DNA of 63,739 nucleotides, counting the filler, from Octopus bimaculoides (taxonomy: Eukaryota): the NCBI RefSeq assembly GCF_001194135.2. It is 5 parts of 3 records of this genome, joined end to end, with 100 filler letters (N's around TTAATTAATTAA, not from the genome) between each part and the next. Parts side by side here need not be neighbours in the genome. Positions count along the whole stretch, not along the records: positions 33,487 to 50,821 come from NC_069007.1; 4 more parts are not named here. One strand, 5' to 3'. How positions within the stretch are numbered: position 1 is the first letter of the stretch; the number at the start of each line of letters is the position of its first letter. Under the pieces are notes generated by a model. That model did no database searches. It had not been told where the DNA came from and was given only the letters and a program-made list of their open reading frames with translations. Shown here piece by piece: positions 33,487-50,821 of the stretch. Both the position numbers and the translations under genes were made by a program.

Positions 33487-33715
33487 GTCCCGAACAGGTA
33501 AGGCCCCCCCCTCGGTAACACTGCCATGCCAGAGACTTCTGAAAATTATCCAGGGTCTTTGGCCCGAATGTACGTCGGAATAGGCTGGCCAGCTGACTTT
33601 CGTCGAGACCAAGGGTCTCCCCTAAGGGGTCATCACATTTCGCCTCTACAAGCCCTCTATAGAAGAATGCGGTGGAACCCCCGCCGCAGGCATTGCACAA
33701 GCGACGGAAATACAT
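33487..33715 (-). mobile_element. Tx1/L1-like ORF2 C-terminal fragment
   Basis: GC-rich; FYRGLVEAKCDDPLGETLG..FQKSLAWQCYRG then, after a frameshift in a G run, ALPVRD; resembles the W..xGxLPV motif upstream of the L1/Tx1 zinc knuckle; truncated by the spacer. Confidence 0.5.
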
Positions 33716-33984
33716 GCGTATTATAATTACTAAAATAATAACGAAAATATCGAAAAAGAAAATCTACCTAAAATAAAAAAGTTTCTTGAGGATTAAAAAT
33801 ACTAGAATACTTAAACTTGCAAATTAATGCAGAGTAATAACTATACACATACGAACATTTTATAGTACGTAAATAATGCTATGAAAATTATTACTGAAGA
33901 GTCACGTGATAAACATGGCGTCCATTACCAGAGGTAAATACGTATTATAATGTATGTATATATATATATAATATATGTGCGTGT

Positions 33985-34308
33985 GAAGGCGAATGGCTCA
34001 GTGGTTAGAGCGTCGAACTTACGAACGTGAGGTTGTGACTTCGAATCCCGGACAGGGTTGCATGTTGTGTTCTTGAGCAAGACATTTTATTTCACATTGC
34101 TGTAGAAATGAGTTGCGATGTCACTGGTTCCAAGCTGTATCGGCCTTTGCCTTTACCTTGGATAACATTGGTAACACGGAGAGCGGGGATGATATGCATG
34201 GGCGACTGTTCGTCTTCCATAAACAACCCTGCTCGAACTTGTGCCTCGGAGGGTAACTCTCTAGGTGCAATCTCATGGTCATTCGTGACCGAAGCGGGGG
34301 GGGGGAGT
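33985..34308 (+). mobile_element. tRNA-derived SINE, same core with a third tail type
   Basis: A box TGGCTCAGTGG, B box ACTTCGAATCC, core TTCTTGAGCAAGACATTTTATTTCAC, tail GGTGCAATCTCATGGTCATTCGTGACC. Confidence 0.75.
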
Positions 34309-34438
34309 CTCCAAAAACACACACACACATAAATATTTATATACAGAGAGAGAGTGCCTGAGAAAGGGACAGATGGATAGATGTAGGTATGGATAGCTAG
34401 AACGAGATATAGAGAGAGCTGTAGACAGACACGCATAG

Positions 34439-34471
<33 letters not shown>

Positions 34472-37400
34472 TACAGTTAAATATACAACGTTTTGTACAG
34501 AGTTCCACTCTACCAAATTCACTCGAAAATATTGTTTGGTTGTGGATTTAGTAGAATAAATGTGCTCAAGATGGCTCGCAGAGGGTCTGAACGTGGAATT
34601 TCCTGGTTGCAAAGCGACCTTCTTAACCATAGAGCCTACCCAAAACCAGTAGTAGTGCTTTGGTTGCAGCGAAGCCATGGCATAGATGCACTTACTACAG
34701 ATGTTACCAGAATGCCACCAGAAAGTTCAAACCACAGATCACTTAGCTGGGAATTGAACTTTCGTAACCACCAACAATACCTCAGTTCATAAGTCGTTCA
34801 TGTCATTATAATGCCACATACAATAACATAGAAATAAATGCAAAAAGCAAAAGCGAAACTAAAACAGACAGATTGATGAAAGATGTGTATTAGACATAAT
34901 GTAATCTAAACGGAAACATGAAGCAGCCTTGTTTTCTTTTATCTTCTTTTGTTGTAAATTTATTATTTGTCCAACTGAAAACAACATTTAATAAAATACG
35001 GCAGAAAAAAAATACAAATTAAATATATCGTAAGATTGAAACATAAAGAAACAGTAAAATAAAATGAATTAAAAAAAAAAAATGGATAATAAATTTTTAA
35101 AAAATAACTATTTTAAAATTTAAAGATTTCTTTGATAATATTTAAAACAATTTTGATTGTAATTACTGTCTGATTTAATGATAATTATTTAGGATTAAAT
35201 AACAAATATTATTTTGTATAAGTTCTGATGAGTTGGCTTACGGATTTAATTTACTCTGCTGGAAATTTGAATGAAAATAGAATTCCAAATGATACAATGT
35301 GTAAATATAATATTACATGATGCGGTGGAGGGGGGGGGGAAATCAGTAGGACGACTGTGTAGGCGTTCGATCTGCTATGAATAATCTTCTGTACGTTAGA
35401 CTCCGTTAATTAAAAATTAAAAACCGATAAACAAAAGGACATAGACACAGCCTTTCTGTAACAAGAAGTGTTGGTCACAGGCGGAAAGCCAACAAGGGTT
35501 GGTTTTGTCAGTGAAAGTTGACCGGATTCTAAATAACAGACATGATTCAGCAAACGGCTTTAGTATTTTCGAGTCGTCGTTAGTGAAACATTTGTTTTAA
35601 TGACATGCTTGTGGGTGAAAGCAGAAAGCTTCTACCTGGAAACCAGACCGCTTTTTAAGATGTCCAGATGTTATGTTTAGACAAAAGTATAGTCTGAATC
35701 TTCGCAAAAAATGAAAGCAGTAATGTTAATCAAATACGGGGAGTGAAGTGGAGTAAGTGAAATTATGTGGCTTAGTTATTTGGGTGTGGCACTCACGACT
35801 GCCACGGTTTGGATTCCCCGACCGGTTGGTTCGTTGTGCTGTTCATCTAAACGCTTGATTTATCTTTGCTTTAGTCCTCTGAACTGTGAATATGTAGCCA
35901 TCGTATTCAATTCAGCAAGAATCTTGTGATCTTGTTCAATTATGAAAACTCGACACCCGACCTAATGAGTTCAACAGCTTTACATCTTGAAGGGAACTTG
36001 TCTACCCGCAAGAAGGGATGATGTCTACCCGCAAGAAGAGATGCAGTTCCCTCGAACGTTCATCGCAGTTTCAACACTGAAATCTCAGAAAAGAGTTCAG
36101 ATGGAGCCGAGTTGGTGTTAGAAATATTTCTTGCAGAATATGTCACACAATGGAATTCAACCAAGAAGATTTCAAACCACGTTGTTGTAATGGAGCTACT
36201 TAACATTCGCAAACGGTTTCAATCACTCCGCAGCGTTGGTACTAACATTTCTAACAACACTATGATGGATAACCCATTTCCTCAGGCAGACACCCGTGCA
36301 AACGTCTAGGTTATTTACCACACAACGACGCTTACATCTGATTTCCAAAACGAATGCTGATGTGAGTGTAGAGACTTTTGAACAGCAGAAGCCATCTAGA
36401 TGGGTCTTTTGTCTCTTTTATCTGTTACTGATTTCGATGATTGGACAGCGGCAATTTAAAAGTTTGGTAATTATTGTATCGTTCTCTAATGCCGACTCGC
36501 TAATTAATAAGGGTATAAACAAACCCTTATCAGTAGTCAACTGGTGGGAATATGACAAACGCAAACACGCACAAATACATTATACACATTCACATCCACA
36601 CATTAGCAAAGGCAGCAATTAGATATATGTTGTACTAGAATATCAAGCATAAACTTAACTCTGATGAATAGAAATTTGTTTATATGTAGCGAGACTGAAC
36701 CTTCTTCACAATCATATCACTTCCCGGCCCCTCCGCTTTGAAATCCTCAACATTCAAGAAAACTTTCTACAAATCACATGAATTTCTGTTTCTATGGCTT
36801 TGAAATCCTTAGCATGCTATTTGAAGGTGTGGTTGACCTGACAGCGATCCAAAAGGCCGAGGAGTATTAATCGGTTACATTTATATGTTATGTATACTTT
36901 AATAAAAAAAAATAGTAGCTGCATAGAAACCGTTATTGGGGCTGGACGTTGTTCTTGAATTAAATTTGTATTTGCTGTCTTTCGTTGAATTTGAGCGTTT
37001 ATGCCGTTTTCTTTTCGTACATTTTGTCGTATTTTCTTTACGTTTTTTTTTTTTCATTTTCTGGTTCAAAGTTTAAGTGTACATGGCGTATATCAGTTTT
37101 TGGATTTGTGTCATTGTCTGAGACAATTTAATTTACTTAAATATTATTATCTCTGTCTAGATTAGTTGGGCGAGAGCAGATAACAAAAATATATTATGTA
37201 ATTTTCACTGTTCATGTAGTTGGTAATTAGCGAATGCTTAAACAATAATTCTATTTCTTTAATTGATTATCTACTACATTGTTATTTTAACAGAGAAACA
37301 GTATTATTCAAGCATTATTAAACAAAATTCTAGTCAGCGCAAAGGTGAACGCAAAATCACATCTGTACACAGAGGTTGTACAGAAAATAATACTAAACAA

Positions 37401-37983
37401 TTTATCAACTGACAGTCATTCAAAATGCTCAAGTAAATAGAATAATACTTTCTCTATACGAAGGTACAACACGACATTGTCTCCATGAAAAGCGGTGCAT
37501 TTCAGTCATCACGAAATTCAAATGTCGCATCCTCTTTGGAAAACTGCAACTAAGTACGGTTGTACTTACTTTTGTGGATATTTTTCACAGTCATTTTCGT
37601 TTGGCTTCTCACGTAACATATGTTTCTCTGCGAAACACCGTGCTTCATTGTATCTTCGCAGTGGACTTCAGAGCATGCCAGAGCTAGGATGTACAGTGGA
37701 TTAGGGAACAGTGCACTGCCCAGTGTGCCGATAGCCTGATTTGTTACGAAGGTATGAGTGTTCGCCTCCTCGTTTGGTAAACGTAGATGGCTTTCAGATT
37801 CTTCTGTCTCCACCTTAGGAATTCTTTAAGCAGTTTACTTTCCGAAATCTACATCTTGATACTACTGTCCATGAAAAAGAGTCACATTATTAAGGCCGGT
37901 TTTCCTGTTTCCACTTGGACTGGACACTGGTCTGTTGCAGGATTATTGATTTTTGCCAGCTGAGTGGACTGGATCAACGTGAA

Positions 37984-38020
<37 letters not shown>

Positions 38021-40599
38021 AACAGAGAGAGGGAGGAGTAACCGTTCTATATAAGTGAGTATGCTTAAGCACATATAATACGCATTTAAGAGATGTATGT
38101 ATCTCTCTCTACAAATATGCTAATTTTGGCCGTCTACGTCTCAATCAATTTTCAATACAGTACAACCATAAATGATTTGCAAATTAATGCGAAATATCTC
38201 GCGCATGGTGCTGCAATCAGAACTGATAACAAAGAGATTATGGGACGTAAGCATGCTTCCCTGGGCATAAATAGGTGCATTGTATTCTATACGTGCTCAA
38301 ATATATTTCGGTGGGAAAAAATAAACACTTGTGACAAAACGATGTTATATATATTTAATATAATTACAGTGGATACACACCAGAGACCTCAACTTCGTTG
38401 TCCCATAACACATTAGGTATGTATTATCGTTGTATGTAGATATGTACATATTTTCTATTGTTTTTGAAGAATTCAGAATCCAGCGGAAAATTACGTTAAT
38501 GTTTGTGAAACTTGATGGAAAATTATTGACATCACGTATTTGAAAATACATTTAGTTGGTGTCATACAATAAAACGCTGTGGGGAAGACGAGTAAACAAG
38601 TTGGCTGAGAGCAGAGATAATAAAGTTGCGAAGTCAATACCGTGATAATGGTTTATGGACTCGCTTAGGATATTTCTTTTTAAAGTTATATATTATTTGG
38701 TTTCGTAGGGGTTCAGTGATTTAATTCGTCAGAGCAACATGATCGACATTGCTTGTAAGATAATAAGCATCCTTGCTACACTTTCCTCAAAACTGTCGAC
38801 CTAACGACGTAAGAAAATAAACGATATGTATAATGTAATCCAAAGTAAATAGAATTCTGAGTAAGTCGAAGGACATGACCATCATGAAGGAATGCATTTG
38901 ATTATATTTCTCGTGAATCAGGGTGGATGGCAGCTAAACATCAACAACAACATGAAATTTCTCTCTGTCAGGTGTGGGTATTAAGACTCGTTGAAAAGGT
39001 TAATTCTTAACAAGTCACAATTAATTTGAACAGATTGACTAAATGATAATTTAAGTAATATCTATTGGAGATAATCTAATCTAATTTACAGTTGGATAAT
39101 ATGTAAAGTGGTCCAGAGAATGGTGGTTCGAACTTGAATCGAAATAGTGGAAAACTAGAATTTGATTTGTTTAACAGAACTCGTGGGTCAAGTACAGTCG
39201 TTGATTTGTCTGCTAGAAGAATAACGATAGAAATGTATTTTTGTTTTTACAAGAGACATACCTTCAGAGGTAAAGCTCCATATATCACTGGCTTCATCGT
39301 TACTGGAATTGCCTCTCGGAATATATTTCAGAATCCGCAGGGCTACTGAAAAACGTATATAACTAAGTTGCAATTAGCGGGATCGAACGTGCGAGCTTCG
39401 CTTTACTGAATACAGAATTATATTAAGATTAAAATTTAAAAAAATAGTGATAATACTTTCTAATTATTCGAAGAAAACTAACAATTGTGATTTCATCTAA
39501 GATAAACATAGCCATGCAGCTTTATTCGAGGTGTTGCTATTACTAGTCTTTGAAGCGAACACACGTATAAGGAAATATCAGTAGAAAGAACATAGCGACT
39601 AAGCTTAGTAGTTAGGGAAGAAGCGTCAACTAGGTCAAAAGAAGCTTCGAGCATAGGTTGCAGATGATGCAGACACAAGATAGCGATGAAATGGGAATAT
39701 CAAGAATGGTTCAGTTTGGAGCAAGTTAAATAGAAGATACAAAAATTTATTTCCAGAACCAGTCGAGAGAGTTCGCATTACGATAGGTATAATTTAACTA
39801 TATCCCGAACATTTATCATTATAGTCTAAGTAAATCACACATACAGATAAATATTTCAAGGAATTTTCTGTATTTGAAATATTTAAACGCCAAACAGAAT
39901 TAGTAGTCGGGGAGGTTCAGACTGGGTCAGGATATAATTGCCTGCAGACTTTATAAAATAAAGAGTGAAAGAAATTGAATGGTAAGAAGATATATTAGCG
40001 GTAAATTAAGAAGTGTTAGGAACTGAAAATAAAGAAATAAACGAGTAAACGTAGAAGCAGGTAAGAATTCTTGATAGATTGTTAAAGGCTAACTATAGAA
40101 AATCTGCAAACGTCGTCCAGGTAAATCCGAAATATCTCGTACGTATTAAGGATCCTTATTAGTGAAATATTTGAGTACTTTTCTGATTTCTGGGCTAATT
40201 CTCGTCTATTATAAACACGAAGGAGAATTCGTAGAGGCTCAGACTAGGTCAGACTATAAAGAACAGACCATAAAGAACAAAGACTATAAAGAACAAAGAA
40301 CTTTAATGATAAGTTTCCCGATTATGCTCTCAGTAAATTATGCTCTCAGTAAAAACTTATTCATCTGATGGCGACATAGATATTTTCAACTTTTCTACAT
40401 ATATATGAAAAAGAAACACACTTGCACATTCATTTTAAATTCTGTCTACATTATGTCTTCTGCAAAACATAGCTTTACAAATACATAACCGAAAATTTCC
40501 ACCCTAGTCCCATCCTCGGGTTGATGATTCAGCCCTAATTACAGACGACTCCAAGAACCAGTACCCTACATTAAGCTCTGAAAAGTGCCGCTGTTTCAA

Positions 40600-41200
40600 G
40601 TGTTTCTATGTTGACGCAAGAAACAGGAAGCAGAATTATTCTGATACAATGGGGAGGGTACCCACAGCATATTTTCGAGAAGGTCAATAAATCCAGTCAA
40701 TTATTGCACATACTTAGAGTGCAACATGATATCAACAGAGAAAGATATTGAGCTACGTAACAGCAAAGTTTGGACAGAACTTAAAATTCACCATCATAAA
40801 ATGGAAATCAAATTTTGGAATCGGATATCCAAGCTCCCATGAAATCTGAAGACAACTTCCTCACAACGGTTGCAACTGTGTTACTTTATAGGATTCCAGA
40901 ATGGAAATAAAACAAAAGAGTGAGAAATATGCTGGATGGCACAAACATGTACATGGTTTATGCCACGTTCACTTTTGTCTTGTAAAGAATAACTAAGCTT
41001 CCAGACGTGGCAAACACGTTTAAGAAAAGAAGACTGCTTTGTTTGACGCCGCTGAGGGAAAAGGTATTGCTTAGTGAACCTTATATTGGACGTTAAGGAA
41101 TGTACAAATTGTCATTGTTTGTTCTGATAAGACATACGTCAGTCAGCAAACAGAAAACATTGGATGTTACTGAGCCTAATTATCAAATGGCACAGAAAAT
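40600..41200 (+). mobile_element. Highly decayed RTE-clade LINE fragment
   Basis: Scattered in-frame remnants STEKDIELRNSKVW, TVATVLLY, LDGT, KTYVSQ. Confidence 0.5.
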
Positions 41201-41736
41201 GGAGATAAGCGTAGCCTCAGGATCAGGTGTATCAATAAAGAGATAAACCCGATGATAATGATGATTGTTCAGAATATTACAAACATTTTTGGTTCAAAAA
41301 ATGCAAACATGTGCACAGGGAACGATTCTGTTTTCGGACAGTAACCTAACGCTTTAGTTTGGCAAGACCTTATTACACTGGAGTTAAAGTGGAATGATTG
41401 AAGCTTTCAAGATCGATAGCAGATCAATATATTTTGAACGTTCGTCATTATGTATATGTATCTCTCCCTCCCTATATATATATATATATATATATAAAGA
41501 AAGCTGGTAAAATCGTTACCGCGCCAGGTAAAAAACTTAGCGTCATTTCGACCTTCTTTCGGTCCTCACCTGACATTCCGACGAGGTCGACTTTGCCGTT
41601 CATCCATCCGCGGTCGATAAAATAAGTAGCAGTTGATGACTCGAGGCGANNNNNNNNNNNNNNNNNNNNNNNNNNNNNNNNNNNNNNNNNNNNNNNNNNN
41701 NNNNNNNNNNNNNNNNNNNNNNNNNNNNNNNNNNNN

Positions 41737-41781
<45 letters not shown>

Positions 41782-44192
41782 GTATGTGTGTGTGTGTGGG
41801 CTTTGTGTAAATATATGTCTGATTCTCTCTCCCTTGGTATATACACACACGCATACACACACACAGGTATAGATAGAAAAAATAACTGGACAAATAAATA
41901 TATGAGCGCAAGTGCAGTGAAGCCCATAAATGCTACATTAAATTTACTTAAAAATCTGCCAGTTGTTGTTGGTCGCTATTTGCCAGAGCAACGTATATCA
42001 TTTGATGTCTATTATCACTGTTGTAACATTGACTATTTGTGAGTCTTGAGGCGAAGGTTTTAGAAACTTGAGAATAACAAGTAGTTTGTCTGATGTTTGA
42101 AAACATCAATCGATTTAGGCATTTGGAGATCAAGAATAAGTGATTAAAGAGTATGATTGATCGATATCTTGCAGTATAGAATAGGAGCTAAATATATGCT
42201 TCATAGGGAATTTTCTTCTGAGAGATGCGATATCACATATAAGTGTGACTAAGTCTTAACCGTTTTGTAACACGTAAATCATCACAGAAACGAGAGACAA
42301 CGTCCATGACATTTGCAAGTTTTCCCAACTTGACGAAATAAACGCCGTAATTGTCCAGCTTAAATCTCTTTGGGTCCGTATTAATTCCTTTTATACTTTC
42401 TTTGAAAATATATGGGTTAAAAAGGACTTGCAGAGTGTCACCGATCTGCGATGAACGACTGTGTGATGTTTTTCCAGAGTTTCTGTTGCGTGAATCAGTG
42501 TATGAATGATTGATTAGGAAAACAAAAAGAAATAGCATGTGACGATCGAATCGCAGTCGTGAGGATTTGGGGATCATTTTTTTTTTCCAGAGAAATAAAA
42601 TACGATAAGATACAAGAATTGATCTATGTTTAAGCGCTTCCTGATTGAATTCAGCCAATCGTGGGAATAATGTATTTTACTTTCTGTTGGAGCTAGTCCC
42701 GGATATATTTGTTTCTATACCAACAGCAGCGGTATCAATCCACGTATGTGTTACCCATAGACAGATACAGGTATATCAAATACTATACAGTATAAATGGG
42801 TGATTGATTAAAGTTATAACTGCCTCTAGATGAAGTGCCAAATGGTAATAACGGCATGCTTTTCTTGAGGAGGGGAGAACATTTAAGATTAAAAATCCTC
42901 CGAAGTTCACATACGTTTAAGTAAAAGGAGAAACCTATTGTCAGGGCAGGTTTATTGTCAGCACAACAATACTCTGACCGAAATCCCAGAAGTCCAAGAA
43001 ATTATGCTATATACGGGTACTAGATTATGCTATGTACAAGTACTAGAAAACTTTGTATAGAGTTTTCAACTGCACAAAGCTCAGTGCAAACCGTTTTATT
43101 TTTTCTTAACACTGAATAGGATCTTGGTCTTTTTTATGGTAACTTTGTCATTGATGGAAGGGGTTGTGATTATTTGTATGTCTTTTTGACAGAGTATATA
43201 TAAGTATATATATATAAGAGTATATATAAGGTTCATCAGATATTGGGAGCTTTAGTATTCGTAAACGGATACGCTATAAGGTGGAGAACAATATAATGAA
43301 GACATCAACAGACTGGTCAACATAAAAACATTATACCTACAGACACATACACATACATACATACAAACATAAGTATATATGACGAGGGAGAAAGTGGAAT
43401 GGGGTAGGAGAATAGAGAAGTGTGTAGTGATAATGTAATATATACATTAAGCATATCACTCTCTTACAATTGTATCTTCGGAGGTGGTAAGATCACTTAT
43501 CAGTTCCCTTATCACAGAATACTATCGCATTAATAGCGAACAGAAGATTATACTCTTATATATTTTCGTCTATTACCGACACTTTTAATGGTATATCATC
43601 CTTGCATTGTCATTTCGATATTAAACAAATATTTAAGCACGTTAAACCAATTTAGGTAAAAGTACTGTGAAACAGAATAAAAAAAAACATTGCCTCATTG
43701 TATTATTTATCGATCTTTTATTGAGAATTTCTCGTATGAAACACGGCTTTCTGATTAATCTAGTCTACTATTGCCAACGTGAGGATTCAGTTTCTTTCGT
43801 ATTTCCAACACCTATAACTCTTTCAAAGGTGTCTTATGATTAGTGCGAGCAAGGGAGAAGACGATGCCGAAACATTAATCGTCTGGTCCGTTTGCTTTCA
43901 ACTGAGGGTTGGGGTTTCATCAGGTGAGGGTTTTAATCTACCATTTAAGTAGAGCAGCAGCCTCTCCAATACGCTTCCATAAAACATCTTTCCACCGTAT
44001 TCCCAGGGTTGTAATCGACCGGAGGTTAGGCTCGATAAAACAGTTTTCAATTAACTTCACAGCTTTGACCTAACTTGAATCGCATAGATGGAAAGCTAAC
44101 TTCTTAACTCTATGCCCCTCATTAGGCTTATGATTGTACAATGCTGAATGCACCAAAATGTTGTCAAATACAATAAAACTAGAGAGTTAGTA

Positions 44193-44626
44193 GAACAAGT
44201 AGAAAGATAAATTTTCTTCAACGCATAGATACTGAACAGTATAGATATAAAGGATAAAATCCTTTTTTCTTTTTAAAAACAGAAAAATTTGTCGGCAGCC
44301 AAGCCATGAGAATCGAACTCACATTCCTCTAATATCCTGTTAGAATGCTTTACCATTTAAGCTAAACTGCCTGATCAGCAAATTCTTCCGCAATTTAAGA
44401 TGTTATAGAATCATCCAGGAACGCTAGATGTCGTATGGGTTACGCCGTATGTAAAACAAACAAGTTTGTTTTTCAAAGCGCTGAAATATATGGTAGAACA
44501 AGTAGAAAGATAAATTTTCTTCAACGCATAGATACTGAACAGTATAGATATAAAGGATAAAATTCTGTTTCTTTTTAAAAGCAGAAAAAATTTGTCGGCA
44601 GCCAGCCATGAGAATCGAACTCACAT
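44193..44626 (-). mobile_element. 434-bp insertion with about 135-bp direct terminal repeats, 10-bp TSD and a split tRNA-like sequence
   Basis: Repeats at 44190-44324 and 44493-44626; AGAGTTAGTA at 44183-44192 and 44627-44636. Confidence 0.65.
44293..44371 (-). pseudogene. tRNA-like cloverleaf (anticodon not assignable)
   Basis: GGCAGTT-TA-GCTT-AAATGGTA-AAGC-A-TTCTAA-CAGGATA-TTAGAG-GAAT-GTGAG-TTCGATT-CTCAT-[GGCTT]-GGCTGCC-G: all four stems pair; non-canonical anticodon loop; 5-nt insertion before the acceptor 3' strand. Confidence 0.55.
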
Positions 44627-44933
44627 AGAGTTAGTATATTATCTAAGCCTTCAGGTTGTTTCCGTATATTCTATGACACGCATATTCGCAACAGTCCCTT
44701 TTATGTCAGGGCAAGGAATATGATCACTGACCAAACCCTTCTCAAAGGATTTATGATTAACCAAAAAAGAAAGTTTCCATCACTTTCTTGAATCATTGAG
44801 ACGGAGTAGTAATGCGATATATCGAGACTGATCGATACATCGAGACATTTTAAAATCGCTTCAATACCTATGGGAACTTTGGCAGTTTATGTTTGTGATA
44901 ATTTTGATGGTGGTAGCGGTGATGATGGTGGTG

Positions 44934-44968
<35 letters not shown>

Positions 44969-45230
44969 GATCGTGGTGGTGGTGGTAGTGGCGGCGGCGG
45001 TGGTCGTGGTGATGGTGGTAGGGGTGCTGGTGATGATGGTGGTGCTGGTGGGATGGATGAGTAGTAGGTGTACTGGTAGTAGTTATGTTGGTGGCAGTGC
45101 GTGTGATGGTGGTGGTGGTAGTGTTGGTTGTGGAGTATTATTGCTGTATTGTTATTGATAGTGGGGTGCCTGTGGTGGCTTCATATTAGCACATCGATGT
45201 TTTGTGTTTGTCCTTAGTTTTTGGGGAATT

Positions 45231-45266
<36 letters not shown>

Positions 45267-48200
45267 CGTATAGATATGTGCTTTTTGCATATGTATGTCT
45301 TTTAGTTTGTGCTAGTTACCCTGTTCACACTGCATGTCAACCACCCATAGTGGTTTGTATATGCCTATGTAACTTAGCAGTTCTACCAATGAAACCGATA
45401 AAATAATTGCCAGATTTATAAAATACGTACCGCGGTATATTAACCGACTAACCGCTTCAAGGTGGTACACCAGCATGGCCGCATTCTAAATAATCAGACG
45501 TGTAAAAGATCAAAGACGATGCCATACAAATCGTACTCGCATCTGCTTTCGATGTAAGCAATCCTGGTAACAGCAAACGCTGTGACTCATTGCTATTTAG
45601 ACTGTCTGTGTTTACGAAATAAAAACTAAAATTGAGACGAAATATGTCTACTTCTGTCTTCTGTAGATTTTAGTTAAAACATGGGAAAAGTATTCTGCAA
45701 TGCAAAAGTGTCAAACAGATATGGACCTTTCGTGCGCACGTGGAAACATAACAGAAACATTGATTGAAAGCGTCAATGAAATCTACGAGACACACAGACA
45801 GATTCGTTATCATGATGTATTGAAAGAAGCACTAATGAAAACAGAGCTATACCCGATTTTGGTAAAAGACAAAAAAGAAAACAGACAAGAAAAGAAGTAA
45901 AAGATAGCATAGACAATGATATACACGATACATTTGAGAGAAAAAATGAATTGTATCAGATGATAAATATTATGTTTTGTGCGTGTGATTTATTGAGTTT
46001 ATGGAGATGGGAAGCGGTATAAAATTTCAACCACCCACACAGCGAATCAGGAAATTTGTCACGATTAGCCACAAATGATTTTCATCACATATCATATCAC
46101 CATGTACAAAAAAATAATAATAATAAATATACACACAATAAAAAGAAAACCTTTGTGATTTCTGCGCAATACTATTCGAACACAATGCTAAATTTTCAAG
46201 TTAGTAATAGAAGAGAGAAGAGTGGTTTTGATATAATATAACATTGGTGCAGACACCATAATTTAGTTAAACAGATAGCTACGTAATTTTGTGAACTCGG
46301 TTTGGATACCAGATAGCAGGTTCTCCTGCCAGTGATTTTATAACGAAGCATCGATTCTACCAGAGCAACAATTGTCATAATAAACTCTCATAGCCATTCA
46401 ATGTTTTAGAAATAATATATTTTTTTATAATGAAATATAAGGATTATATATAAAATAATATATTTTGTATATTGTACAGGTATACACAATTTATTTCTAA
46501 TAATTTTTAACATCTTATATGAATCCCAACGTTGAGATTGAACCTACGAGATTCATGAATGTTTGCTTGAATTAATATATTTGGAAGCAAGTGGAAAGAC
46601 CCTACAACGTTCCTGTACGACCGTCGTATCCTGAAGCCAAGCGTAACGCCTCGATCACCTTTTACAAATATTGGAGTCATACACCTGTCTGAGGATATTC
46701 CCTATTCTTTCTATGACAGTCGGATGCCCTTAAGAGAATCGTTCATACCTACCATCCTCCTTTGAATAAGTTTTTACTGAAGAAAGTAAAGTAAAATGAT
46801 TATTTGTAAGATTTATACCTGAATATTATACGACTGGCTGTACCTTAATGGCCAATTTCATGAAGAAAGGGCACACCAGTCTGTTTGCGGTAGATACAAG
46901 AATGTGTCATTCGTAATCAGCCATACTGATTCAATGCCATTGACTCTAGACCTGCAAAAATAACAGCTAACTCTCCTTCGAAATAGAGGCTCCGTTCTTC
47001 CTGGTGGTGCTATTAAGTAACAATTTAAATCCACATCATATGAACAGGTGCAATCACTTCCCTCGCATTCCCACTAAGTTTCCGAAAGTTCCGTTTGAGG
47101 GAAAAGGTTTTAACTGATGGAAGACAGCTGACAAAGACATTTCATCAATGTGACACACATTGAGATCGAACCTAGATCCACGTGTGCAATGTGAAATTTA
47201 CTTTTGACAGACAAGGAGTCCTGTAATGTATCGTCTCATACGCACGCACACACGCATGCTTGTACATATATCTATGTGTGTGTGTGTGTGTGTGTGTCTA
47301 CATATACATGTACGTACATAAATGTGTGTGTATGTGTGCGTGCGTGCATGTGTGTATGTATTGATGTGCGTTTTATATAATATTTTGAAGAACACAAAGC
47401 TAAATATGCAAAACAATGAATACGAAATTGTAAAGTTTTAGAGCCTCACAGACAAATACATTTTAAGAGAGGAATAATTTTCTTTTCAATACCGTTAGCT
47501 AACCGACTGCAGTAAAATACAGAAATATCGAAATAAAATATATAACTAAAGAAACAACTAGCTGAATTAGTTTGCTCTTTCTCCACATAATTATAACTCA
47601 AGTTGAAATAATCGCATAAAAAGGAAGGTGTCAATTGGAAATTTTACAGCAATACTTCAGTGAAATATTAAGAGAACGAAAAAGGAATATAAAAATGGAG
47701 TTGATCGCAGCAAGGCATTGTGGGAATAAAATACCCATCAATTGTTTAAAATGTCGATTTTGTTGTTTGCAGCAACGTAGTGTCGCTCACAGTCATTCAA
47801 TGAAGTAATTACAGTATTTGAAATACGATAAACACACATACCAAAATAGCCAAAAAAAAAAAAAAAAAATCGTCTTTGGGTATTAAAGTATTTTGGCAAT
47901 GGAAACATGGCGATGATATTCCCACGGTAAGCGGTGCCGTTACAGCACCTAAAACTCTCTCTCCGCTAATCTATTCACAAGTCAAATTAAAGTTTCTGAA
48001 ACCAGCAAACAAACAAACAAAGAAATCCATGTGATTTTCATAAATTTAACAAAATTACCGCTCAGAATATAGTCATATAATCTAAAAGTGAAATTTTGAA
48101 TGGATGGGTGGATGGCCGGTAATGAGGCTGGTGGTTGTCGTCTTATATCGCTATTACGGATGCTGCTTTAGTTCTATGAACCTCAATCAATTGTCGACAA

Positions 48201-50821
48201 GTAGAAATATTAGTGAACGTTTCTAGATTTGACCAGTTTGAATTTCTGTTCACTCTGGGTTGCACGTCAATGAATATATTAACAAATGAGTCAAGCAGTT
48301 TATGTAATTCACTAGGGTATACTCTGAGCAAGATTTGGTTTCTAACTCTAGAAATAGAATTGGCCTTGTACAACAAGGAACTGTCACAATGGAATAAGGC
48401 TTTCTTGATTTAACCTGACGGCATTTCTTCTGATTTTAGGTTCTGAGTCGATAACATAAGTACTATTCCAGTACTGAGCTTTATGTAAACTATTCCCCCC
48501 CCCCTTTCGGCGTTACTGGCATCGTTCAAAAACATTGAAACGAATATCAGTTGAAGATTATGTGTAGCAGTAGAAGCTGTCGTCGATGTTATTAAAAGCC
48601 AGTTATATGCAAGACTATTTATATTTTGGCCGACATTCTTGCTGATAATTGGAGACATTTAATATGAAATATATTAGTGTTTTTGTTGATTAGTAATATA
48701 TAGGCCCTAACCGAAAACAAACTTCTGATCTAAAGCATCACAGGTATAACTAAACAGTTGGTTTTCGAAGTAATTGCTAACAGACAATTTAATGAAAATG
48801 ATCAACTTTTAAGAGAGTAGATTGAATATTTATTGCAATATAGATTTCAATATTCGATGCTCAGTTAACAACAGAGAAAGACAATAATGAGGCCCTGGAC
48901 CAGCCTGGAGCTAAAGAACTTGGTTTCTAGGATGAATAGAACAAAGCCTAGAATATTTTTAGCAGATCAAAGAAAATACAGTAGGATCTATTTGAGATGC
49001 AGATGCCAATGTTTGAATTATTCTGAAATGGTTCAAACGTTCTCTTGTGAGAATCATGAAAGTCGAAAACAAAATAAATTTTTAAAATATAGAGGAAATA
49101 AACGTTACTTATTCATTCGATTGAAAATGTACATTAGATGGAACTTGGAATTATAAAATGAAAAAGAAATTATTTAATTTTACGCACACATGTATATCTA
49201 TGCGACCATTCCAAAACCTGACCTTTGGCATACATGCGCACCTGTATGGGAAATGTCTATTTGATGCAGGGTGTAAAGATCCTCGAGTCATGCAGACTCA
49301 TAAGGTCCAGTTTGTCGTTTCCCATAGCGTATATATTCTCAACTGAACGGGACGCCGGCCGGTAAATGGATAACTCAGCCCAGTGGACGGGAGCAATGTG
49401 AAATGAAGGGTTTTGTTCAAGAACACAATGCGTCACACAGTCCAGGAATTGAAACCACAATCATACGAAGCAGAGAGTAAGCTTATATGTAAGTCATTTG
49501 TGTGGTTGTTCAGCAAGAATCTGCAAAACAAAGGGACGCTGTGAAGTCAGCTTAGAAAATCGGGTAAACACCTATTAGAAGAAATGTTTTTAATGTATGG
49601 GGTGCGATCAAGTCTCCAGAGAGAATCGAACGCTGGACCTCTCAGATACCGGATCAGACTCCCCTGCCACCGGATTCTCTCTTTTTACAATGCTAAGTAA
49701 TAACTTTTCAAATATGAGAATATTTTTCAAACAAAATTATTAGCGACGAGCGTGTCGGTGTTCCTCATAAGGACATTGCGAATGCAGGAAGACTGTCAAG
49801 ACATATGAGAAAATTAGGGTAAATAACTCTTAAAACACGGAAACAATAGGCAGTAAGACTACAGAGGGCGTCGAACCCTGCATCACTCGAATTCCGCCAG
49901 AACATATATAATATAATATAATGTAGTGTAATACGATACAACATATCGCACTCACATATATATATATATTTATGATATACATATATATATATATATATAT
50001 ACACACCCGTACATAAATGCACATATTGGTTCGTGTGTGTGATCGTATCTTCTATGTATGTATATATGCATGCATTTACATCAAATGACAGACAGTTTGC
50101 TGTATATATCAACTTTTCTATAAATGGGATGTACGTCATAAACTATATTCTGTAAATATTTTAAAAGAGTATAAAAGTCGTTTTTATTCTTTTTTATTGA
50201 AGTTGGGTTTTTAAGTTTCGGGCCAGTTCATTGTAGCGTATTTTAAAACATATTGATAAAACATAAAACTGTCCGTATAATTAAATATTGTGTACATTCA
50301 CCTTTTAATATCACATTGAAATAATTACATTATAATTAATATAGATAATTAAATACACTAATTCACACGCACGCACATACGTATTATACACACTCACGTG
50401 CACACAAATGTGGTGTGTGTGTGTATAAATATATATGTTATATGTATATATATATATATATGTGTGTGTGTATATATATGTTATATGTATATACATATAT
50501 ATATGCTATGTGTATATATGTTACGTGTATATATACATATATGTTATGTCTATATATATATGTGTGAGTGTATAAAGAGGCATGAAGAGCAGGAGAGCAG
50601 GAAAAAGAGGAATGGGGAGAGACCTCTGCGAGCTTGTTATTAAATATTAGGCTCATGCCATATCCACAACGACTAAGTGATAAACAAACCGCAAACACCT
50701 CAGCCTGTTACTTATTCACAGTTTTAAGTAAACGAGACTCAGGTGAATCACTCCATTTCAAAGAATAATGCGCACGCCCACGTGTGTACGTGTGTGTGTA
50801 TTTTCGTATATATATATATAT

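What the first reader, a model, noticed from the sequence alone, without database searches (positions are those of the whole stretch)
44183..44636. TSD-flanked mini-element with LTR-like direct repeats across which a tRNA-like gene is split
Seen: a 434-bp insertion built as A-U-A (A about 135 bp, copies about 303 bp apart, a few substitutions and indels), flanked by a 10-bp duplication AGAGTTAGTA. On the minus strand the end of U plus the start of A forms a complete tRNA-like cloverleaf (44371-44293). The other A copy (ending at 44626) begins at the T-arm, so it carries only the B-box half. Inference: this is about 1.4 units of a 303-bp circularly permuted or tandem monomer, not a normal head-body-tail SINE. 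It could come from reverse transcription of a circular or multimeric Pol III transcript, or be a TRIM-like element with a Pol III promoter in its repeats (conceptually like 5S-bearing Cassandra or retrozyme partial-tandem insertions). I do not recognise it as a named family.
Basis: partly seen in the sequence, partly recalled or inferred. Interest (0 to 1): 0.7.

Follow-up and report, generated by a model that had tools for sequence, protein, structure and literature searches.

The report
Partial-tandem insertion carrying a tRNA-like gene
A 434-bp piece of mobile DNA, made of one full 303-bp unit plus the tail end of a second unit and carrying a decayed tRNA-like gene, was inserted once into this eukaryotic genome; this layout is already known from Penelope-type retroelements, so it is a modest curiosity, not a new kind of element.

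Summary
A 434-bp block (44193-44626) is flanked by a perfect 10-bp duplication. It is built A-U-A, with two 134/135-bp copies 302-303 bp apart and 95.6% identical. On the minus strand there is a degenerate tRNA-like cloverleaf (44371-44293), just below Rfam's tRNA threshold.

The block is 1.43 units of a 303-bp monomer inserted in one event. The tRNA-like gene is not split: the downstream unit carries it whole, and the upstream unit is simply cut off at its 5' end inside the T-arm. The repeats are not LTRs. They lack TG..CA ends, a primer-binding site and a polypurine tract, and the duplication is 10 bp rather than 4-6.

A multimeric Pol III transcript is unlikely, because T5/T6 runs follow the tRNA-like part in each unit. 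No hammerhead or other ribozyme is present.

The best reading is target-primed reverse transcription that left a pseudo-LTR, as in Penelope-like elements, their non-autonomous derivatives and animal non-LTR retrozymes. Here a tRNA-like Pol III gene stands where those carry a ribozyme.

No second copy could be found in any accessible collection. Family status, the partner enzyme and the circle idea therefore remain untested.

The parts
44183..44192 (.). Left copy of the target-site duplication AGAGTTAGTA. Its last 3 nt (GTA) are also the first 3 nt of repeat A (microhomology).
   Evidence: (D11)
44627..44636 (.). Right copy of the target-site duplication AGAGTTAGTA.
   Evidence: (D11)
44193..44626 (-). 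The inserted block, 434 bp, equal to 1.43 units of a 303-bp monomer. GC is 33%.
44190..44492 (-). The full-length unit (303 nt), read on the minus strand. It has a 121-nt leader, the tRNA-like part, and a tail of about 100 nt ending ...CTTGTTCTAC. As minus-sense RNA it folds with z = -2.45 (0 of 100 shuffles as stable). Plus sense gives z = -0.92.
44493..44626 (-). The upstream, 5'-truncated unit (repeat A2, the pseudo-LTR). It starts inside the T-arm and holds the B-box half, the T6 run and the complete tail.
44190..44324 (-). Repeat A1, the matching 3' part of the full unit.
44325..44492 (-). Single-copy part U. It holds the leader and the 5' two-thirds of the tRNA-like part.
44293..44371 (-). 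Degenerate tRNA-like cloverleaf. The anticodon loop is CAGGAUA (GGA, with A instead of U at position 33) and the variable arm is short. A 5-nt GGCUU duplicate lies between the T stem and the acceptor 3' strand.
44354..44364 (-). A-box-like TAGCTTAAATG. It has 3 mismatches to TRGCNNAGTGG because of one extra A.
44309..44319 (-). B-box-like AGTTCGATTCT, with 2 mismatches to GGTTCGANNCC. The same sequence recurs in A2 at 44611-44621.
44275..44287 (-). Two T5 runs (44283-44287 and 44275-44279) starting 8 nt after the tRNA-like part. They look like a Pol III terminator.
44585..44590 (-). T6 run at the corresponding place in A2.
44379..44391 (-). Leader strand of a 13-bp helix with the trailer 44279-44291. 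The helix extends the acceptor stem and includes the T5 run.
   Evidence: (-15.6 kcal/mol; 0 of 1000 shuffles as stable)
44279..44291 (-). Trailer strand of that helix.

Best explanation
This is one retrotransposition event by target-primed reverse transcription (TPRT) of a small non-coding, non-autonomous element with a unit of about 303 nt. The RNA sense is the minus strand.

Steps:
1. The plus strand was nicked after AGAGTTAGTA.
2. Its 3' end ...GTA paired with the RNA 3' end ...UAC.
3. The cDNA ran through one whole unit (tail, tRNA-like part, leader).
4. It then continued into the 3' end of a second unit and stopped inside that unit's T-arm. The second unit was either the next unit of a tandem or terminally redundant transcript, or a second RNA molecule reached by a template jump.
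5. A second-strand nick 10 bp away gave the duplication.

The two 'LTR-like' repeats are therefore a pseudo-LTR: a full copy preceded by a 5'-truncated copy. This is the signature of Penelope-like elements, their non-autonomous derivatives and animal non-LTR retrozymes. A LINE enzyme is the second candidate.

The tRNA-like part is a self-contained Pol III-type gene. It has a TATAA about 25 nt upstream of a leader/trailer stem, A and B boxes, and a T5/T6 terminator. It would make an RNA of about 115 nt. It is a passenger or the ancestral core of the unit, not the promoter of the mobilised 303-nt RNA.

Shown: the geometry, the duplication, the microhomology, the absence of LTR and ribozyme features, and the terminator runs. 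Inferred: the RNA intermediate, its sense, the enzyme, and expression of the Pol III gene.
For: - A perfect 10-bp duplication sits exactly at the outer edges of A-U-A, with a 3-nt overlap with the element's end. No inner duplications flank either the truncated copy or the full copy taken alone (read directly).
- There are no terminal inverted repeats.
- The LTR hallmarks are absent in both orientations.
- Only the minus-sense unit folds better than shuffles (z = -2.45 against -0.92), and it keeps the tRNA-like part intact.
[quoted passage not shown] Their duplications vary in length. Non-autonomous derivatives form pLTRs and head-to-tail multicopies, and one of them (MRC1) was first mistaken for an LTR element (PMC8557442; also PMC8969392).
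- Animal non-LTR retrozymes have monomers of about 300 bp, occur as dimers to multimers, have GC below 45-50% and duplications longer than 4 bp (PMC7229834). They are argued to be non-autonomous PLE derivatives (bioRxiv 10.64898/2026.07.22.740005).
Against: - Only this one copy is known. No relative turned up in viral, metagenome or prokaryote-genome contigs, in the protein collection or in paper text.
- There is therefore no family, no partner element with a matching 3' end, and no empty site.
- The 17-kb piece holds no reverse transcriptase or any recognisable protein.
- There is no hammerhead, which canonical PLE pLTRs and retrozymes carry.
- There is no inverted copy and no 30-40-bp tail extension, both often seen with PLEs.
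- There is no A-tail or simple-repeat tail as in many LINE-mobilised SINEs.
- The six A1/A2 differences are clustered, so their meaning for age or for two templates is unclear.
- A short-read assembly (there is an N gap at 41650-41736) could have collapsed a longer array.
Confidence: 0.55

Rival explanations
1. DNA-level 'orphon'. A fragment of a tandem array of a small Pol III gene family (303-bp unit, built like 5S rDNA or the amphibian PolIII/TAN repeats), or of an extrachromosomal circle derived from it, was captured at a staggered double-strand break. Fill-in of the break gave the 10-bp duplication.
For: - Each unit looks like a complete Pol III gene plus spacer, with its own terminator.
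- tRNA-like tandem families with units of 200-740 bp are known: PolIII/TAN, Rana/polIII, Hy/polIII and OAX (PMC10702118).
- There is no poly(A), and T-runs on both strands make a full-length Pol III RNA unlikely.
Against: From general knowledge of end joining, capture of DNA at breaks rarely gives a clean 10-bp duplication with no filler or deletion. No array was seen in the 17-kb piece. The 3-nt microhomology at one end fits priming as well as end joining.
Confidence: 0.15
2. Circular-RNA template. A 303-nt RNA circle was copied 1.43 times around by a reverse transcriptase, as proposed for retrozymes. Host tRNA-processing enzymes acting on the tRNA-like part would replace the ribozyme.
For: A 1.43-unit product with arbitrary start and stop points is what rolling reverse transcription of a circle gives. 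The size, GC and duplication match non-LTR retrozymes (PMC7229834). The minus-sense unit is more structured than shuffles.
Against: - No hammerhead core on either strand and no ribozyme family at E<=10.
- From general knowledge, RNase P and RNase Z leave ends that the RtcB ligase does not join, and no bulge-helix-bulge motif was seen.
- The junctions of the repeat do not fall at the tRNA ends.
- The outcome cannot be told apart from a tandem template or a template jump using one copy.
Confidence: 0.1
3. A miniature LTR retrotransposon (TRIM, Cassandra or LTR-retrozyme type) inserted by an integrase, with A1 and A2 as LTRs.
For: Two direct repeats of about 135 bp flank a 168-bp internal region and are 95.6% identical. 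A short purine run AGAGGA precedes the downstream repeat in minus orientation.
Against: No TG..CA ends. No TGG within 12 nt after the upstream repeat in either orientation. The longest purine run is 6 nt (minus orientation) or 4 nt (plus orientation). The duplication is 10 bp (7 at the least) instead of 4-6.
Confidence: 0.03
4. Two independent insertions of a 179-bp tRNA-SINE, one full and one 5'-truncated, lying 121 bp apart by chance or by insertion preference.
For: The tRNA-like part plus tail (44371-44193) on its own resembles a simple tRNA-derived SINE.
Against: Neither copy has its own flanking duplication, while a perfect 10-mer flanks the pair as a whole. The 121-bp spacer would have to be host DNA, yet it pairs with the trailer in a 13-bp helix.
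Confidence: 0.02
5. Assembly effect. The locus is real, but the number of units is wrong (a longer array collapsed), or the A-A duplication is a mis-join.
For: The piece is a scaffold with an 87-N gap inside a (TA)n tract, which is typical of short-read assemblies that collapse tandem repeats.
Against: A1 and A2 differ at 6 positions, and both outer junctions are unique and carry the duplication. A pure artefact is therefore unlikely. A collapse would change only the unit count (n + 0.43).
Confidence: 0.1

Closest known systems
Penelope-like elements and their non-autonomous derivatives (pseudo-LTR partial tandems; e.g. MRC1 of Chlamydomonas)
   Same: A full copy is preceded by a 5'-truncated copy in direct orientation, which mimics LTRs. 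The duplication is of variable, non-integrase length. Insertion is by TPRT. The Naiad and most Chlamys clades also lack hammerheads (PMC8557442, PMC8969392).
   Different: No PLE sequence or 3'-end match could be tested. There is no inverted copy or tail extension. The unit is only 303 nt and carries a tRNA-like Pol III gene. The target is not a microsatellite.
Animal non-LTR retrozymes (type I hammerhead tandem repeats)
   Same: The monomer is about 300 bp, from dimers upwards. GC is low (33% here). The duplication is longer than 4 bp. There is no PBS or PPT (PMC7229834; bioRxiv 10.64898/2026.07.22.740005).
   Different: The defining hammerhead is absent. Only 1.43 units are present. A tRNA-like gene with its own terminator stands in its place. 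Circular RNA was not tested.
tRNA-like tandem repeat families (PolIII/TAN of the newt Cynops, Rana/polIII, Hy/polIII, Xenopus OAX)
   Same: Head-to-tail units of a few hundred bp each contain a tRNA-related, Pol III-type sequence (PMC10702118).
   Different: Those are long arrays in amphibians. Here there is a dispersed 1.43-unit piece with a duplication, in an unidentified genome of 35% GC. No sequence comparison was possible.
Canonical tRNA-derived SINEs mobilised by LINEs
   Same: tRNA-related A and B boxes, a duplication within the 5-20-bp range, small size, and no coding capacity.
   Different: The tRNA-like part is 121 nt inside the unit rather than at the 5' end. Terminator runs follow it directly. 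There is no A-rich or simple-repeat tail. The layout is a partial dimer.
Chimeric retrocopies made by reverse-transcriptase template switching (e.g. U6-L1 chimeras; dimeric SINEs such as Twin or Alu)
   Same: Two RNA-derived segments are joined head to tail within one pair of duplications. The upstream segment ends at the exact 3' end of the unit. This is a resemblance recalled from general knowledge, not tested here.
   Different: Both segments here come from the same element, and the upstream one is the truncated one.
TRIM / Cassandra / plant LTR retrozymes
   Same: Short direct terminal repeats and a Pol III-type sequence associated with them.
   Different: It fails on TG..CA, PBS, PPT and 4-6-bp duplication. 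The small-RNA gene is not contained in the repeat.

Membership tests
LTR-type miniature retrotransposon (TRIM / Cassandra / LTR retrozyme) | Terminal repeats bounded by 5'-TG...CA-3' | tested here: not met
   On the plus strand the repeats read GTAGAACAAG...GAACTCACAT; on the minus strand ATGTGAG...GTTCTAC.
LTR-type miniature retrotransposon (TRIM / Cassandra / LTR retrozyme) | Primer-binding site (TGG...) next to the 5' repeat, and a polypurine tract before the 3' repeat | tested here: not met
   No TGG in the first 12 nt of the internal region in either orientation. The longest purine run in the last 30 nt is 4 (plus) or 6 (minus).
LTR-type miniature retrotransposon (TRIM / Cassandra / LTR retrozyme) | Target-site duplication of 4-6 bp | tested here: not met
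   10 bp, or 7 bp if the 3 shared nt are given to the element.
Animal non-LTR retrozyme | Head-to-tail units of 150-450 bp, low GC, duplication >4 bp when present | tested here: met
   303-bp unit, 1.43 units, 33% GC, 10-bp duplication. Criteria from PMC7229834.
Animal non-LTR retrozyme | A type I hammerhead ribozyme in each unit | tested here: not met
   No Hammerhead family or other ribozyme at E<=10 in the Rfam scan. Zero CUGANGA cores on either strand.
Animal non-LTR retrozyme | Expression as small circular RNA | not testable with these tools
   No transcriptome and no identified organism.
Penelope-like element, non-autonomous derivative | Partial tandem: a full copy preceded by a 5'-truncated direct copy (pLTR) within one duplication | tested here: met
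   A2 (134 bp, truncated in the T-arm) plus the full 303-bp unit, flanked by the 10-bp duplication.
Penelope-like element, non-autonomous derivative | 3' end shared with an autonomous PLE of the same genome | not testable with these tools
There is no RT or GIY-YIG in the 17-kb piece and no related locus in any collection.
Penelope-like element, non-autonomous derivative | Frequent extras: an inverted truncated copy, a 30-40-bp tail extension, a hammerhead in the pLTR | tested here: not met
   No inverted-repeat partner of the element within 43500-45300. No hammerhead. These are frequent features, not obligatory ones (PMC8557442).
Canonical tRNA-derived SINE | tRNA-related head with A and B boxes at the 5' end of the unit | tested here: inconclusive
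   The tRNA-like part is present (25.8 bits; A box 3 mismatches, B box 2 mismatches). It lies 121 nt from the unit's 5' boundary as defined by this single copy.
Canonical tRNA-derived SINE | Pol III can transcribe the whole element (no internal terminator) | tested here: not met
   T5+T5 (A1) and T6 (A2) runs lie 8-9 nt after the tRNA-like part, with further T4 runs.
Canonical tRNA-derived SINE | Interspersed multicopy family with a LINE-derived or A-rich/simple-repeat tail | not testable with these tools
   No second copy in the piece or elsewhere. The tail ends ...CTTGTTCTAC with no A-run or simple repeat.
Functional tRNA gene | Canonical cloverleaf passing tRNA detectors; U33; for a Ser tRNA, a long variable arm | tested here: not met
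   Below the Rfam gathering score (25.8 < 29). ARAGORN at default settings finds none. It has A33, a 5-nt variable region and a 5-nt bulge in the acceptor arm.

The most novel reading that the evidence does not exclude
This would be a ribozyme-less counterpart of animal retrozymes. A 303-nt unit propagates through multimeric or circular RNA, and an embedded tRNA-like module on a 13-bp leader/trailer stem recruits host tRNA-processing and ligation enzymes to cut and close the RNA. That module would take the place of the hammerhead. Such a family would be mobilised by a Penelope-like or LINE reverse transcriptase.
Probability: 0.06. Interest if true: 0.8.

Novelty: new variant of a known kind. 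Interest (0 to 1): 0.33.

Why it matters
If the unit proves to be a multicopy family, it would show that pseudo-LTR partial tandem insertion is not tied to hammerhead-bearing sequences. So far this layout is linked to Penelope-like elements and retrozymes. It would show that the same route can carry a tRNA-derived Pol III gene.

It would also connect three groups that are now treated apart: tRNA-derived SINEs, tRNA-like tandem repeats such as PolIII/TAN, and retrozymes. It would give a concrete route from an interspersed element to a satellite seed.

There is a practical lesson for annotation. Such structures are easily misfiled as tiny LTR elements, as happened with MRC1. As a single copy in an unidentified genome, it is at present only a well-documented example of a known insertion pattern.

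Tried and rejected
1. Finding relatives. All results were negative or chance.
- Exact-pattern scans of viral contigs found nothing.
- Metagenome contigs: one search found nothing. One search gave 5 hits, all 19-24-bp chance matches in bacterial contigs of 55-65% GC.
- Prokaryote genome contigs: one search found nothing. One search gave one 19-bp chance match in a Sulfurospirillum MAG.
- Exact-ORF look-ups found nothing.
- Protein-collection searches found nothing: the 66-aa ORF of the element, a six-frame concatenate of the element, and a concatenate of 4236 aa made from the ORFs of at least 60 aa in the piece, leaving out the few most repetitive.
- Searching for the sequence strings in paper text found nothing.

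2. Identifying the organism or a partner enzyme from the piece. Pfam found no domain in those ORFs. Searches failed because stop codons are not accepted in translated references. The Rfam 'miRNA' hits are low-complexity TA/TG artefacts far below threshold.

3. A paralogous empty site within the piece. None was found.

4. Relaxed ARAGORN as evidence for the cloverleaf. I rejected this, since shuffles give about 6 hits per 17 kb at that setting.

5. DNA transposon. I rejected this because there are no terminal inverted repeats.

6. Helitron, DIRS or Crypton types. I rejected these on general knowledge: they make no 10-bp duplication.

7. A 5S or other small-RNA identity for the 121-nt leader. 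No Rfam hit at E<=10.
Full report
**What is there**

The piece (33487-50821) is non-coding eukaryotic DNA. Its GC is 32-41%. It has many TA/TG microsatellites and an 87-N scaffold gap. It has no ORF with a homologue or a Pfam domain.

AGAGTTAGTA occurs at 44183-44192 and at 44627-44636 (D11). Between the two lie 434 bp built A1 (44190-44324), U (44325-44492) and A2 (44493-44626). A1 and A2 align over 136 columns at 95.6% identity, E=1e-56, with spacing 303/302.

All six differences fall in the T/A-run stretch just after the tRNA-like part. The first 22 nt and the last 71 nt are identical. The last three bases of the left 10-mer (GTA) are also the first three of repeat A, so the strict duplication is 7-10 bp.

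A 10-mer match at fixed positions has probability 2e-6 in this base composition. With 20-nt tolerance windows, only 0.1% of random position pairs in this microsatellite-rich piece share a 10-mer. The structure is real and is not chance.

**The tRNA-like part**

On the minus strand the Rfam tRNA model matches 44364-44306, covering the D, anticodon and T arms (model positions 8-63). The score is 25.8 bits, below the gathering score of 29. E is 0.0086 for the 1.2-kb search and 0.12 for the whole piece.

ARAGORN at default settings finds nothing. The acceptor stem GGCAGUU/GGCUGCC closes only if a 5-nt duplicate GGCUU is looped out (4 nt in A2). With that loop, all 21 cloverleaf pairs are standard, and the energy is -18.0 against an MFE of -22.6 kcal/mol. 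Deleting the 5 nt lets ARAGORN call a 74-nt 'Ser(GGA)' at default settings.

I do not count the relaxed ARAGORN hit as evidence, because that setting gives about six hits per shuffled 17 kb. A33, a short variable region and the bulge show that this is a decayed tRNA derivative and not a working tRNA-Ser gene.

A2 starts at ATGTGAGTTCGATTC, inside the T-arm, so it holds the B-box half only.

**How the layout should be read**

434/303 = 1.43 units. In minus-strand sense the block is a 5'-truncated unit (A2) followed by a full unit. The full unit has a 121-nt leader, the tRNA-like part and a tail of about 100 nt.

In that reading the tRNA-like part is whole, and the truncation point is arbitrary. 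'A tRNA gene split across LTRs' is only another way of describing it.

The minus-sense unit folds better than shuffles (z = -2.45, 0 of 100 shuffles as stable). The plus-sense unit does not (z = -0.92).

Neither copy has a duplication of its own, while the pair as a whole has a perfect one. Two independent insertions are therefore excluded.

- LTR/TRIM/Cassandra type. There are no TG..CA ends. There is no TGG within 12 nt after the upstream repeat in either orientation. Purine runs reach only 4-6 nt. The duplication is 10 bp rather than 4-6. This reading is rejected.
- Multimeric Pol III transcript. T5+T5 (A1) and T6 (A2) start 8-9 nt after the tRNA-like part, and T4-T6 runs occur on both strands of each unit. 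By the established rule that oligo-T terminates Pol III, a unit-spanning Pol III RNA would need read-through.
- Retrozyme-like circle. There is no hammerhead or other self-cleaving family at E<=10 and no CUGANGA core on either strand. The repeat junctions do not coincide with the tRNA ends, where RNase P or RNase Z would cut. The idea is not excluded, but nothing here speaks for it beyond the geometry.

**An additional feature**

The 29 nt before and the 23 nt after the cloverleaf pair. A 13-bp helix joins 44379-44391 with 44279-44291, followed by 5 more pairs. The duplex energy is -15.6 kcal/mol, and 0 of 1000 shuffles are as stable. The same helix appears in the MFE of the whole unit.

The helix includes the T5 run, and a TATAA lies about 25 nt upstream of its 5' strand. 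The tRNA-like part, the stem and the terminator together look like a self-contained Pol III gene for an RNA of about 115 nt with paired ends. This is an inference. It implies that the tRNA-like part is a passenger or the ancestral core of the unit, and not the promoter of the mobilised RNA.

**Most likely mechanism**

A clean 10-bp duplication, a 3-nt overlap between the target and the element's 3' end, no inverted termini and no integrase features point to target-primed reverse transcription.

The direct repeats are what the literature calls a pseudo-LTR. [quoted passage not shown] Their duplications vary in length. Their non-autonomous derivatives form pLTRs and head-to-tail multicopies. One of these derivatives, MRC1, was first described as an LTR element (PMC8557442; PMC8969392).

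Animal non-LTR retrozymes share the roughly 300-bp monomer, the low GC and the duplication longer than 4 bp (PMC7229834). They are argued to be PLE derivatives (bioRxiv 10.64898/2026.07.22.740005).

Tandem families built around a tRNA-like sequence also exist: PolIII/TAN, Rana/polIII, Hy/polIII and OAX (PMC10702118).

One copy cannot tell whether the second unit came from a tandem or terminally redundant transcript, from a template jump to a second RNA, or from a circle. Any 1.43-unit product looks the same.

**Limits**

No relative was found anywhere I could search, and there is no empty-site paralogue in the piece. The following are therefore untested: copy number, a constant 3' end, the partner element, the empty allele and RNA expression. 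The organism is unidentified. A short-read assembly may have collapsed a longer array (n + 0.43 units).

**Verdict**

The element is best filed as a partial-tandem (pseudo-LTR) insertion of a small non-autonomous retroelement that carries a tRNA-derived Pol III gene. That makes it a variant of a known insertion pattern.

It fails the defining test for retrozymes, which need a hammerhead. It also fails the tests for LTR elements and for canonical SINEs. Interest is moderate to low until a family is shown.

Noticed in passing
window 44279-44291 with 44379-44391 (minus strand): A 13-bp leader/trailer helix (plus 5 more pairs) extends the acceptor stem of the tRNA-like part and includes the T5 terminator run. 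No shuffle of 1000 is as stable. A TATAA lies about 25 nt upstream. This suggests a self-contained Pol III gene of about 115 nt with paired ends.
   Followed up: partly
window 44212-44302 and 44515-44604: All six differences between the two repeat copies cluster in about 42 nt of T/A runs just after the tRNA-like part. The last 71 nt and first 22 nt are identical. Either the homopolymer runs are mutation hot spots, or the two copies came from two different templates.
   Followed up: partly
window 44908-45133: A 226-bp imperfect (TGG)n / (GGT)n tract (75 copies, 69% matches) lies 270 bp downstream of the insertion and gives a strong local GC skew.
   Followed up: no
window 41650-41736: An 87-N scaffold gap sits directly against a (TA)n tract (41737-41785). 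This shows the piece comes from a scaffolded, probably short-read assembly, in which tandem repeats may be collapsed.
   Followed up: no
window 33487-34800: The stretch has higher GC (about 41%) and overlapping open frames of 90-150 aa on both strands. There are no homologues or Pfam domains. It may be an unrecognised repeat and is cut by the piece's edge.
   Followed up: partly
window 41771-41875, 47226-47399, 49964-50075, 50361-50545: Sub-threshold Rfam 'miRNA' matches (mir-297, mir-466, mir-3149, mir-5014 and others) all fall on TA/TG low-complexity tracts and are artefacts.
   Followed up: yes
window 35999-36043, 43001-47, 40250-40353: Short tandem duplications of 14-23-bp units with 2-3 copies. 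Their meaning is unknown.
   Followed up: no
window 43900-43990 (minus strand): The 11-mer TACCATTTAAG of the tRNA-like D-arm recurs at 43939-43949, next to a CCTGATGAAAC string. No Rfam hit and no extended similarity to the element, so this is probably chance.
   Followed up: partly
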